64,000 nt of DNA from Phallusia mammillata (Eukaryota). The notes beneath the pieces are model-generated. The model did not search any database and was not told the DNA's origin. It saw only the letters and a program-made list of their open reading frames with translations. The stretch lies in NCBI GenBank assembly GCA_965637545.1, contig OZ281499.1:2480001-2544000 (forward strand). The letters run 5' to 3'. Below are positions 26,401-29,400 of the stretch, in pieces (within the stretch, counting starts at the first letter, position 1; each line of letters begins with the position of its first letter). The position numbers and the translations under genes are program-made.

Positions 26401-29400
26401 AATTATTAGCATCCCACGAGTAAAGGCCTTTACTTTAACCTAGTATTCTTATAAATATAGCAGAAATACACTCCCTTTAACATTTAGTGTTAACTAATGC
26501 AGACTTCTGAGCAGAACTTACTGAGAGGTGCATGAGATTGTCCGTTGGTTGTGCTGTAAGAGTTCAGTAGTCGACGCTGTGCATTTGACGGCCTTCCAGG
26601 ACCACGAGAAGATAACTTTCCTGAATCCAAACCCAGTTTGTTGGGTTTCTTCTTACCAGAGGCTTCGTTGCGACACAGCTCGCATACAAATGAACCTGCC
26701 AATGAATATAACAAGGTATATTAGTACTAAGTGCTAAAGTAATTATTTTAGTGCTAACAGAGCGGTATTTTTGAGAACAGTTATGAGCAGTGAGTCAATT
26801 GCAACAAACAAAAAGCATTTTGCTACAATCAGGATAAATCACATTTATTAAAATGTATATTAGTTTAGGGTGTTCCACAACTGAAAGTATTAGGGACTGC
26901 ATTAGGTTTGAGAAATGCATAACTGTAACATTATTTGACCTGCATTTCAATGATAAGCAACCTTTTTGGGGCTGTAACTAATGCAATTTACCACATAATG
27001 TAATTGATAACTGCCTACAGGGTAGTGTTTGCAGAAAAGCACAAGTCGTGCAGATGAGCCACATGCTTTAGGTTAAATGTTTTAGGTGATCCCAGATCAA
27101 AAATGTATGTCTTTGATTAAAAAATAATGTGTTACAATTGCATATAGCACAATTTGCATTAGGATTGTAAAAATAATGGCATACAGAAAAACAAATTAGG
27201 AACCTTTTGGCATCTTTGATAATGGAGGTGTACAACATTCCATGTGAAAGCCCCGATCACAGGAATCACAAAACAACAAATTGTCCTGAAACAAAAAATG
27301 TAGAGTTTAAGAATTATGCAGATATATAAAAGCATGTGAGCCAATAAAACTTGGCCATTGTGAGCCAGTTTCATCTGTGCTGTATACCCAGTTGTGGCAT
27401 CGCACAAACTAGGTGATGCATGGGGTTGTACCCTGTTGCTCCCAACAAACTGGAGTGCTGTTGGATGGCTACACTAGCCAATGCGACCGATCTCTCGTCA
27501 CCAGCTGCACTGATGAGACCTTACAGGTCGAAACAGTGTGCACTGTCTGCAGCTTATGCAGATATAGTTATTAGAACAGATATTCTCAAACTTTTTTGCC
27601 TAATTTACTCTAGTCTGCTAAATAAGGTTACTTCAAAAAAACAGTTGCAAAAACAACATATAGATAGATTGGTGTGTTTGTCATTTTGTTTAACAGTATG
27701 TTGTTGGTGAATTTCATAGCAAACTTTTGCACATATTACATAGTTGCAATTGTAAGCTTAGCACACACAAAAACAAACCACATACATTGCACAAAGTTTT
27801 GTGGAAAATTTAGTGTTAGATTTTGACAAGGTTGTAGAAAACTATATTAAGCATCATAAAAACTACACCAGTAGTCTATTGCCACACTGTCTGAAGAGCC
27901 TAGAATCAAAGACTTGAAGTGGTTTGTCGACACATACTTCAGAAATTGTGGCTCGTTTTTATCAAATCAGACCTCTGTGTGGCATAGCAACATAGCCTTT
28001 AACACAATGCTACACAGGTGTTAATGAACAACACCTAAGCAGCACTTGGCAAAATACCACAATCCCTATGAACCACATCAGTGGGTATAAGAGCGTGACC
28101 AGCGCGTCAACGCCGTTTAAAAAGTTAATAGAATTGCTCTGTTTGTGCTGGCAGAGGTGCGTTGTGGGCAAAAGGGGTCTCTAAAGCTAGTCCTAGACAG
28201 GTTGTGCGCCTTTCAACAAATACAAGTGTTTTTGAGGTTGTAAGTGTACACCAAGCGGTACGAGGGGTGACACTTAATACTACTTGTCTGGACTAAACCA
28301 ATTTGAAACTAAGAAAAAGGGATGTAGGCTTTTGAATGAAGTTTATGTCGATTTTGTCAATACTTTTTTAAGACGATGTCTTGTATTATTTTGGATTTGC
28401 TTTCTTTTTTTCCAAAATTCTGATTAGCTTCTGCAACATCATGGTTTGAACCAACCGTAAATATTAACATACTTGCCTTCTAAAATGCAAATATGAATAA
28501 ATATTTCAAATATATTCAAATTAACATCAAAATTCTACAAGCAAATTTAATCATACTTGTTTGATGGTAAAACCATTCTTATAAATAATTTGCTATTGGC
28601 ATATTGTAAACTAAAAACGAAACCCTTAAACTACCTTTACCAGTATTGGTATACAACCAAACAAACAATCAAATTAATCAGTGACCAAATGTACACAAGC
28701 AATAGAAAGTAGTGAAGGAATCAATTAAAAACATATGCTACCTTACAAAGTAATATTCACATAATTCAAAAACATGTCAAGAATCTATTTTGAATCAGGG
28801 CTTTCCAGTTCATTAAAAGGTTACCGTTATCAGGACCTTTACAAAATCCCTTTTAGGTGGTGACCCATGTACCAAGGCATTTATGAGTGGGCGACCAAAG
28901 CCAGGAGGTAGACTATATTTCAGCTGATGTAACAAAAACAAACAAATGTTTCGCCATTGTGATAATGAATCATAGTTCCAAGTGGTCTGATACACAAGAT
29001 ATCATGTTCATACACAAAGGCCAGATCACGTGACCTAACATTAATCACATGACCTAACACCTACTATTTGTTTAAGTTTTGCGATGATTTATTAGAACAA
29101 CAAATTGTGCAAGACATGCTTTATTGGATGTGTCAATATCACTTTTATGTAGGCGTTTAACCTACTATCAAACAATTAAATGTACGCCTTTATTTTTGCA
29201 AGACAAATTTTGTAATAATTTATCTTAAAGAATGCCTTGTGTACTTACTAACAAAAAAAAAACAAATAGCCAAATTGCAGCTAAAACATACAATTCCAAA
29301 TGGTAGAATACACGAAAAACAATGTTGGTGTATAAAAATATTTATAAATCCTATTCCAGAAAAATACTAAAATAAAGGTATATTTGAGTTGTTTTAAGCA

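What the first reader, a model, noticed from the sequence alone, without database searches (positions are those of the whole stretch)
27314..27566. Family B: a ~227-bp non-coding retroelement ending in a perfect hammerhead ribozyme (retrozyme-like)
Seen: a complete type I hammerhead with a 7-bp stem I, CUGAUGA, 4-bp stem II, GAAA, a near-palindromic stem III and a GUC site. It forms the exact 3' end of an ORF-less unit flanked by a 13-bp direct repeat. A second complete copy (53165-53391, 12-bp TSD) differs in the stem II loop (ttaca vs tttta) but keeps the stems. Decayed copies lie at 7745, 20852 and 54294. The upstream body is hairpin-rich (cccagt-tgtg..caca-g-actggg; ggcta-cac-tagcc). Established: non-autonomous HHR retrozymes exist in several animals, can yield circular RNAs, and long variable TSDs indicate target-primed reverse transcription. 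Inference: five loci in 64 kb suggests a high-copy, recently active ribozyme retroelement family that may be undescribed in this lineage.
Basis: partly seen in the sequence, partly recalled or inferred. Interest (0 to 1): 0.85.

Follow-up and report, generated by a model that had tools for sequence, protein, structure and literature searches.

The report
Hammerhead-ribozyme retrozyme family in a sea squirt
The self-cutting RNA motif is real and belongs to a young, high-copy, non-coding jumping element with a 282-base unit, a known kind of element (an animal "retrozyme") that I found no paper describing in sea squirts, and its copies carry the insertion marks of Penelope-type retrotransposons.

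Summary
A complete type I hammerhead lies at window 27503-27554(+), with predicted cleavage after C27547. A second lies at 53168-53219(-). Three decayed loci also exist. My descriptor finds 2 motifs in the window against 0.01 per shuffled window.

Two details need correcting.
- The 227 bp is not the family unit. The unit is a closed 282-bp monomer, seen in tandem arrays of 3-4.3 units and in dispersed copies that differ by 0-5 nt.
- Copy A is a two-armed insertion. A 22-nt inverted "tail" arm (27327-27348) is joined to a 5'-truncated arm that ends 10 nt past the cleavage site.

Of 16 insertions examined closely, 13 are two-armed, and the composites carry 8-14 bp duplications (mostly 12-14). 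One arm ends 5-14 nt past the cleavage site, the other about 35-41 nt past it. This is the published Penelope-like element (PLE) insertion pattern.

An exact 29-mer of the ribozyme occurs 455 times in the genome. None of 38 autonomous PLE 3' flanks shares this ribozyme or body; 35 carry minimal PLE-type hammerheads instead.

Verdict: a non-autonomous metazoan retrozyme, probably moved by PLE enzymes. It is a new member of a known kind. RNA expression, circular RNA and self-cleavage remain untested. Other readers of this scan had already noted the same 282-nt unit elsewhere in this genome.

The parts
27314..27326 (.). Left target-site duplication of copy A (13 bp, TTATGCAGATATA)
   Evidence: Read directly. 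It is identical to 27554-27566.
27327..27348 (-). Inverted 'tail' arm of copy A: reverse complement of unit positions about m13-m35, the stretch that follows the ribozyme in full units
   Evidence: Local alignment matches 21 of 23 columns, score 18, against a maximum of 11 in 2000 shuffles. The same one-sided tail arm is seen in other insertions.
27350..27557 (+). Direct arm of copy A: unit positions m86 to m282 plus m1-m10. It is 5'-truncated and 95% identical to the reference monomer
   Evidence: BLAST against the 282-bp monomer taken from an array.
27503..27554 (+). Type I hammerhead ribozyme of copy A; predicted cleavage after C27547
   Evidence: Rfam Hammerhead_1 aligns end to end at 21.9 bits, E 0.0069 locally. 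The descriptor scan gives stems I=7, II=5, III=6. Shuffle control.
27554..27566 (.). Right target-site duplication of copy A. Its first 4 nt (TTAT) also match unit positions m7-m10, a microhomology
53153..53164 (.). Target-site duplication of copy B on the side of the element's 3' end
   Evidence: TATTCTGCACTG against TATTCTTCACTG at 53392-53403, 11 of 12.
53165..53391 (-). Copy B: a single 5'-truncated arm, unit positions m65 to m282 plus m1-m10, about 96% identical, with no inverted arm
53168..53219 (-). Type I hammerhead of copy B (loop II UUUUA); predicted cleavage after the C at 53175
   Evidence: Descriptor scan. Its minimum-energy fold is the canonical three-way junction.
53392..53403 (.). 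Target-site duplication of copy B on the side of the element's 5' end
54293..54577 (.). Old head-to-head pair: a minus arm (about m152 to m13, 78%) and a plus arm (m128 to m269, 84%). Both hammerhead cores are mutated or truncated
20848..21183 (-). Two old fragments (20848-20962 at about 82% and 21005-21183 at about 78%). The first keeps CUGAUGA, GAAA and GUC, but stems I and II are broken
7739..7880 (.). Old short head-to-head pair (minus arm about m251 to m13; plus arm m174 to m261), about 89%

Best explanation
Family B is a non-autonomous hammerhead retroelement of the metazoan non-LTR retrozyme kind. Its genetic unit is a closed, non-coding 282-nt sequence carrying one canonical type I hammerhead.

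Proposed cycle:
1. Tandem or read-through transcripts are made.
2. The ribozyme cuts after GUC, giving unit-length RNA that host RNA ligase may circularise.
3. RNA in which the cleavage junction is intact, either multimeric or re-circularised, is reverse-transcribed into staggered chromosomal nicks by the RT and GIY-YIG endonuclease of the autonomous Penelope-like elements that are abundant in this genome.

Integration is usually two-armed. Each arm has its 3' end outward. One ends about 10 nt past the cleavage site, and the other about 38 nt past it (the one-sided 'tail'). Both arms are 5'-truncated, and the whole is flanked by a duplication that is mostly 12-14 bp. Window copy A is such a composite with a very short tail arm. 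Copy B is a single arm.

Shown here: the motif, the unit, the arrays, the copy number, the youth of the family, the arm ends, the duplications, and the lack of a shared autonomous partner in the sample.
Inferred: in vivo cleavage, circularisation, and PLE enzymes as the mobilising machinery.
For: - Motif.
- Isolated fold: the 70-nt segment alone folds into the canonical three-way junction.
- Unit: a 282-bp period in arrays of 3.0-4.3 units at 98-99% identity.
- Closed unit: about 20 arms reach upstream of m39, and every one runs on into the previous unit's ribozyme, never into other sequence.
- Non-coding: no ORF and no tRNA-like part.
- Abundance: 455 exact 29-mers against 0 in the control; 2200 first-look candidates.
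- Youth: 0-5 differences per 282 nt between loci.
- Duplications: 8-14 bp (mostly 12-14) around whole composites in 14 loci.
- Arm ends: the no-tail arms end at m5-m14, and 11 of the 12 full tail arms end at m35-m41. Of 16 insertions examined, 13 are two-armed.
- Orientation: among the first 100 exact hits there are 18 convergent (-,+) pairs within 600 bp and no divergent pair.
- Literature match: 5' truncation, partial tandems, an adjacent inverted 5'-truncated copy and a 30-40 bp tail at one end only are the published PLE insertion pattern (PMC8557442).
- Autonomous PLEs: there are 878 first-look candidates and many intact RT+GIY-YIG frames. They carry minimal hammerheads. This co-existence is reported for invertebrate retrozymes (PMC7229834).
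- Multi-unit arms lie inside single duplications (for example 475, 397 and 328 bp), so the template held more than one unit or was circular.
- Arm starts: 8 of about 45 arms begin within 14 nt of the cleavage site, 2 of them exactly at it.
Against: - There is no direct RNA evidence. The runs holding the sequence are only guessed to be RNA and are kept as contigs. The depth pattern follows copy number, so carry-over DNA or read-through transcripts could explain it.
- Rfam scores the motif below its gathering threshold.
- Folding energy is no better than shuffles, and copy A prefers a competing hairpin.
- No sequence similarity links family B to any sampled PLE 3' region, so the link to PLE enzymes rests on insertion anatomy and co-occurrence alone.
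- Only 63 of 878 PLE candidates were scored and 38 flanks read, so an autonomous partner could have been missed.
- GC is 49%, at the upper edge of the range described for animal retrozymes.
Confidence: 0.75

Rival explanations
1. The copies are 5'-truncated or solo terminal repeats (pLTRs) of an autonomous Penelope-like family, not a separate non-autonomous element.
For: The insertion anatomy is that of PLEs (PMC8557442). PLEs are abundant, and only a fraction were inspected. In Xenopus, retrozymes are sequence relatives of pLTRs (bioRxiv 10.64898/2026.07.22.740005).
Against: - The unit closes on itself at 282 bp in every arm long enough to tell (about 20 of 20).
- None of 38 PLE 3' flanks has the family B ribozyme, and none is linked to its body. 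The one weak body match (L082) lies outside that PLE's 3' end. Thirty-five flanks have a different, minimal hammerhead.
- No PLE frame lies upstream of family B in 34 loci or in the window.
- The one family B copy near a PLE lies outside that PLE's duplicated span.
Confidence: 0.1
2. A SINE-like element mobilised by a LINE, with the inverted arms produced by twin priming.
For: It shows variable 5' truncation and long duplications. LINEs exist in this genome according to earlier notes.
Against: - It has no poly(A) or microsatellite tail and no tRNA, 7SL or 5S-like head (sequence).
- Both arms carry the same 3' region, with ends fixed at about +10 and +38. Twin priming at random internal sites would not give that.
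- It forms tandem arrays of a closed unit.
Confidence: 0.05
3. A satellite DNA that happens to carry a hammerhead, as first thought for newt satellite 2, spread by recombination or DNA circles rather than through RNA.
For: It forms tandem arrays of a 282-bp unit at 98-100% identity.
Against: Most copies are dispersed, partial or little more than one unit long, 5'-truncated, two-armed and flanked by 8-14 bp duplications, with multi-unit arms inside a single duplication. The arrays are short, at most 4.3 units in the loci seen.
Confidence: 0.04
4. The family is a retroelement, but the hammerhead is a passenger relic that does not cleave in vivo.
For: - A competing fold is as stable as the ribozyme fold.
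- Every insertion keeps the junction uncut.
- Naiad PLEs proliferate without hammerheads (PMC8557442).
Against: - All core positions are intact in the young copies, and 455 copies share the exact 3' half.
- Old copies lose the core, which fits neutral decay after insertion rather than a family-wide relic.
- Some arms begin at or within a few nt of the cleavage site.
Confidence: 0.06

Closest known systems
Metazoan non-LTR retrozymes (Cervera and de la Pena 2020, PMC7229834; coral, mussel, axolotl)
   Same: Both have a canonical type I hammerhead in a short non-coding unit (170-400 nt, here 282). Both form tandem repeats from dimers upward, have duplications longer than 4 bp, and co-exist with autonomous PLEs that carry minimal hammerheads.
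   Different: - The host lineage is a sea squirt according to earlier notes of this scan. I found no description in tunicates.
- GC is 49% against the reported <45-50%.
- Arrays are short and most copies are dispersed.
- Helix III is a 5-bp near-palindrome, and helix I is a plain 7-bp stem with no obvious internal loop.
- Circular RNA has not been shown here.
Penelope-like elements and their pseudo-LTR hammerheads (Cervera and de la Pena 2014, PMC4209133; Craig et al. 2021, PMC8557442)
   Same: The insertion anatomy matches: 5' truncation, partial tandems, an adjacent inverted 5'-truncated copy, and an extension ('tail') at one end only. The tail here is about 28 nt, against 30-40 bp reported.
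   Different: - Family B has no RT/GIY-YIG frame.
- Its ribozyme is canonical (GUC site, 5-bp helix III). The PLEs of this genome have minimal ones (GAAA followed by a UAUAUA-type helix III).
- PLE copies here end about 63-68 nt after their ribozyme, not at +10 or +38.
Vertebrate retrozymes as PLE derivatives (Li, Clavereau and Pollet 2026, bioRxiv 10.64898/2026.07.22.740005)
   Same: They reach the same conclusion, that animal retrozymes depend on or derive from PLEs, and they report the same mix of monomers, dimers and multimers.
   Different: Their link is sequence relatedness to pLTRs and co-occurrence. Here there is no sequence relatedness to the sampled PLEs, and the link is the integration footprint. 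That paper's text does not mention a tail or head-to-head copies, and it names TSDs only for plant LTR retrozymes.
Schistosoma Sm-alpha / Sj-alpha hammerhead SINE-like elements and newt satellite 2
   Same: These are short, high-copy, non-coding repeats carrying a type I hammerhead near one end (from my own knowledge and the review PMC6765202).
   Different: I made no sequence comparison, because those sequences are not held here. Family B shows the two-armed PLE-type footprint, which I cannot check in those elements.

Membership tests
Metazoan non-LTR retrozyme | Canonical type I hammerhead with a complete catalytic core | tested here: met
   CUGAUGA, GAAA, GUC and three helices are present. 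Shuffle control: 0.01 hits per window.
Metazoan non-LTR retrozyme | Short non-coding unit (about 170-400 nt) found as tandem repeats | tested here: met
   A 282-bp period, 3.0-4.3 units, 98-99% identity. No ORF longer than 53 codons.
Metazoan non-LTR retrozyme | No LTR, primer-binding site or polypurine tract; duplications longer than 4 bp when present | tested here: met
   Duplications of 8-14 bp, mostly 12-14. The unit closes on itself with no terminal repeats.
Metazoan non-LTR retrozyme | Low GC content (<45-50%) | tested here: inconclusive
   GC is 0.489, at the upper edge of the reported range.
Metazoan non-LTR retrozyme | Expressed as unit-length linear and circular RNA | tested here: inconclusive
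   Fourteen runs from 4 studies hold the sequence, but they are only guessed to be RNA and are kept as contigs. The depth tracks copy number, and ends or circles cannot be seen.
Metazoan non-LTR retrozyme | Ribozyme self-cleaves | not testable with these tools
   The only evidence is indirect: 2 arms begin exactly at the cleavage site and 6 more within 14 nt of it, out of about 45.
Metazoan non-LTR retrozyme | Co-exists with autonomous PLEs carrying minimal hammerheads | tested here: met
   878 candidates and many intact RT+GIY-YIG frames. Minimal hammerheads are present in 35 of 38 3' flanks and in the window at about 4503-4548.
Autonomous Penelope-like element (or its pLTR) | RT plus GIY-YIG frame contiguous with the repeat | tested here: not met
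   No PLE frame lies upstream of family B in 34 loci or in the window. None of the 38 PLE flanks holds family B sequence belonging to the PLE.
Autonomous Penelope-like element (or its pLTR) | Insertion footprint: 5' truncation, inverted adjacent copy, one-sided tail | tested here: met
   compared with PMC8557442.
LINE-dependent SINE | Pol III-type head (tRNA, 7SL or 5S) and a poly(A), microsatellite or LINE-derived tail | tested here: not met
   ARAGORN finds nothing in the trimer. The ends are CTTAT or TTTTACAT, with no A-run or simple repeat.
Rfam RF00163 Hammerhead_1 | Score at or above the 34-bit gathering threshold | tested here: not met
   21.9 bits with an end-to-end alignment. The loss comes from the 8-nt insertion in helix III relative to the model.

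The most novel reading that the evidence does not exclude
Family B may be a natural record of how Penelope-type enzymes integrate RNA. Most of the young duplication-flanked insertions examined (13 of 16) have two outward-facing arms. Their 3' ends are fixed about 10 nt and about 38 nt past the ribozyme cleavage site, and tail arms can be as short as 8-22 nt. On this reading, both staggered nicks prime reverse transcription on RNA whose ribozyme junction is intact (multimeric or circular), and the unexplained one-sided PLE 'tail' is simply the difference between the two priming sites. Arms that begin at the cleavage site would be genomic fossils of ribozyme cutting in vivo.
Probability: 0.35. 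Interest if true: 0.55.

Novelty: new member of a known kind. Interest (0 to 1): 0.4.

Why it matters
Animal retrozymes are a recently recognised class. The machinery that mobilises them is still argued from co-occurrence and, in frogs, from sequence relatedness to Penelope-like elements. This family adds a chordate lineage outside the vertebrates. It also adds an independent line of evidence, the integration footprint itself. The family is young, so duplications and arm ends can be read to the nucleotide. That makes it a convenient system for testing whether retrozyme RNA is cut and circularised, and how Penelope enzymes prime and resolve insertions. For genome annotation, it explains many short fold-back and ribozyme hits in this genome as one repeat family.

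Tried and rejected
- The Rfam gathering search of the whole window found no family. The motif appears only with the E-value threshold.
A fixed-spacer pattern missed copies A and B because loop II is shorter than I had typed, and hit only the decayed copy at 20870-20896.
- A GIY-YIG family search to find a partner gave 7 loci. The one with family B nearby (L042) proved a coincidence, because its 99.9% duplicate (L043) ends 710 bp before the family B copy.
- A weak family B-like match in L047 is a decayed fragment unrelated to the neighbouring frame.
- A weak match in L082 (69% over 86 nt) lies beyond that PLE's 3' end.
- I tried to separate rolling-circle copying from array transcripts by comparing within-array and between-locus divergence. 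Both are about 0-1%, so the test has no power.
- I looked for excess conservation of the ribozyme over the body in copies A and B and in the DNA-run variant table. The numbers are too small, and the only frequent ribozyme variants sit at a CpG.
- A Pol III reading (A/B boxes, with TTTT at m31-34 as terminator), checked by eye only, was rejected. The box matches are poor, and the T-run would end transcription inside the unit.
- A search of earlier findings by sequence was blank.
- The array in L031 abuts a run of N. I left it as it is, so the right-hand arm of that array is not interpretable.
- I built no consensus. The reference monomer is one genomic unit cut from L031.
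Full report
OBSERVATION

The sequence is as described. TTATGCAGATATA stands at 27314-27326 and again at 27554-27566, with 227 bp between.

Positions 27503-27554(+) hold a type I hammerhead:
- stem I of 7 bp;
- CUGAUGA;
- stem II of 4-5 bp with loop UUACA;
- GAAA;
- a 5-bp stem III capped by GUGC;
- GUC, with predicted cleavage after C27547.

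Rfam's Hammerhead_1 model aligns end to end at 21.9 bits (E 0.0069 in a 400-nt search). This is below its 34-bit gathering score because helix III is longer than in the model. At gathering thresholds the window has no Rfam hit. A descriptor of my own finds exactly two motifs in the window, against a mean of 0.01 in 200 dinucleotide shuffles.

The second motif is copy B at 53165-53391(-), whose flanking 12-mers match 11 of 12. Within the ribozyme, A and B differ only in loop II. BLAST confirms the three decayed loci at 7739-7880, 20848-21183 and 54293-54577, and their cores are broken.

Thermodynamics alone adds nothing. The z-scores are about -0.4 to -0.5. Copy A's minimum-energy fold is a competing hairpin, while copy B's is the hammerhead.

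WHAT THE UNIT REALLY IS

A search of the window's own 240-Mb assembly gave about 2200 first-look candidates, and the scored ones are 95-98% identical. Several lie 282 bp apart. Tandem Repeats Finder reports arrays of 3.0-4.3 units with a 282-bp period at 98-99% identity.

I cut one genomic unit out of an array and numbered it from the first base after GUC (m1) to the C of GUC (m282).

The unit is closed. About 20 arms are long enough to reach upstream of m39, and every one runs on into the previous unit's ribozyme rather than into other sequence. It has no open frame longer than 53 codons and no tRNA-like part. GC is 49%. As a circle it folds to -95.7 kcal/mol (z = -2.9), and the isolated 70-nt ribozyme segment folds into the canonical three-way junction.

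Copy B is m65 to m10. Copy A is m86 to m10, preceded by 22 nt (27327-27348) that are the reverse complement of m13-m35. That match is 21 of 23 aligned columns, score 18, against a maximum of 11 in 2000 shuffles.

INSERTION ANATOMY

In the 30 fetched loci most insertions are two-armed and head to head, with both 3' ends pointing outward. Read to the nucleotide:
- one arm ends at m5-m14, mostly ...CTTA or ...CTTAT;
- the other ends at m35-m41 in 11 of the 12 full tail arms, ...TTTTA to ...TTTTACAT;
- so about 28 nt (m11-m38) are present on one side only;
- the tail arm can be as short as 8 nt (L011) or 22 nt (window copy A).

Of the 16 insertions examined, 13 show this two-armed form. The exceptions are window copy B and L004, which are single arms, and L027, which has two arms but only an 8-bp repeat at its boundaries. 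In 14 loci the composite is flanked by a duplication of 8-14 bp, mostly 12-14.

Genome-wide, an exact 29-mer covering the 3' half of the ribozyme occurs 455 times, and 0 times when reversed. Among the first 100 hits listed there are 18 convergent (-,+) pairs within 600 bp, 3 tandem pairs and no divergent pair.

This combination is what Craig et al. describe for Penelope-like elements (PMC8557442): 5' truncation, partial tandems, an adjacent inverted 5'-truncated copy, and a short extension at one end only.

All arm ends lie beyond the cleavage site, so every template had an intact junction when it was copied. Arms of 328-475 bp lie inside a single duplication, so the template held more than one unit or was circular.

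Eight of about 45 arms begin within 14 nt of the cleavage site, two of them exactly at it. This hints that some templates had a ribozyme-made 5' end, but the numbers are small.

Dispersed copies differ by 0-5 of 282 nt, so the family is young. Window copies A and B are 95-96% identical to that reference unit.

IS IT JUST THE END OF AN AUTONOMOUS PENELOPE ELEMENT?

The genome is rich in such elements. A 705-aa frame with RT and GIY-YIG matches finds 878 first-look candidates, many of them intact, at 41-100% identity.

I read the 3' flanks of 38 copies spanning that range. Thirty-five carry a minimal PLE-type hammerhead (CUGAYGA, a short helix II, then GAAA followed by a UAUAUA-type helix III) 220-400 nt after the frame. 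None carries family B's ribozyme. The only body match, a weak one in L082, lies beyond that PLE's 3' end.

No PLE frame lies upstream of family B in 34 loci. The window's own PLE fragment (2837-4216) has its own minimal hammerhead near 4503-4548. The one family B copy near a PLE lies outside that PLE's duplicated span.

Only a fraction of PLE candidates could be inspected.

RNA

Fourteen runs from four studies of one species hold 27-81% of the sampled words, but their RNA status is a guess and they are kept as contigs. When laid on an array, they cover family B (summed depth about 80-930) while one unique flank has none. In a DNA run the repeat-to-flank depth ratio is roughly 1200-5000. The RNA-like profile follows the same shape, and several contigs run on into unique sequence.

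This fits read-through transcription or trace DNA as well as it fits dedicated expression. Contigs cannot show ends or circles. Expression and circular RNA therefore remain open.

COMPARISON AND VERDICT

The element meets the tested criteria for metazoan non-LTR retrozymes (PMC7229834):
- a canonical type I hammerhead;
- a short non-coding unit in tandem repeats;
- long duplications;
- co-existence with PLEs bearing minimal hammerheads.

The RNA criteria could not be tested. A 2026 preprint argues from co-occurrence and pLTR relatedness that vertebrate retrozymes derive from PLEs. Its text does not mention a tail or head-to-head copies, and it names TSDs only for plant LTR retrozymes.

I found no paper on such elements in tunicates. 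The only mention is nine Rfam type I hits in the Didemnum genome paper.

That the host is a sea squirt comes from earlier notes of this scan. I did not verify it independently.

Other first readers noted the same 282-nt unit elsewhere in this genome, and a follow-up on another family reached the same head-to-head PLE reading.

It is a new member of a known kind. Its modest added value is a clean, nucleotide-level integration footprint.

Noticed in passing
window 2837-4580: A Penelope-like element fragment: a frame 48% identical to residues 247-705 of an intact RT+GIY-YIG protein of this genome, followed about 290 nt later by a minimal PLE-type hammerhead near 4503-4548.
   Followed up: partly
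window 17567-17836: 'Family A': a second, unrelated short element flanked by the 14-bp repeat TGCAACTATTTCCA. It carries a hammerhead with a very short palindromic helix III (GAAACGUC) near 17750-17790.
   Followed up: no
L032 (G000:C4:8122000-8125500) and L044 (G000:C4:7514000-7523999): A family B array and a head-to-head pair of autonomous PLE copies each sit inside tandem arrays of tRNA genes (repeat periods about 481-484 bp in L032). This may be a preferred target or a coincidence.
   Followed up: no
G000:C8:5590164-5602118: Four autonomous PLE copies spaced exactly 3300 bp apart, each with an intact 942-aa open frame: a tandem array of a complete element.
   Followed up: no
L031:2565-2700: Next to a run of N, another repeat has summed depth as high as family B in the DNA run. 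It is also present in the RNA-like runs. Its minus strand contains CGAAACGACGTC, so it may be another hammerhead family.
   Followed up: no
window 54500-54577: An old family B arm in which the ribozyme stops after helix II and GAA, and joins directly to the tail sequence (about m7-m36). Helix III and the cleavage site are deleted. L014 shows a similar jump from m279 to m27.
   Followed up: partly
L052-L084 (3' flanks of autonomous PLEs): Copies of the same PLE family diverge from one another about 63-68 nt after their hammerhead, which marks their 3' ends. Several copies run on into identical sequence, which suggests tandem or pseudo-LTR arrangements.
   Followed up: partly
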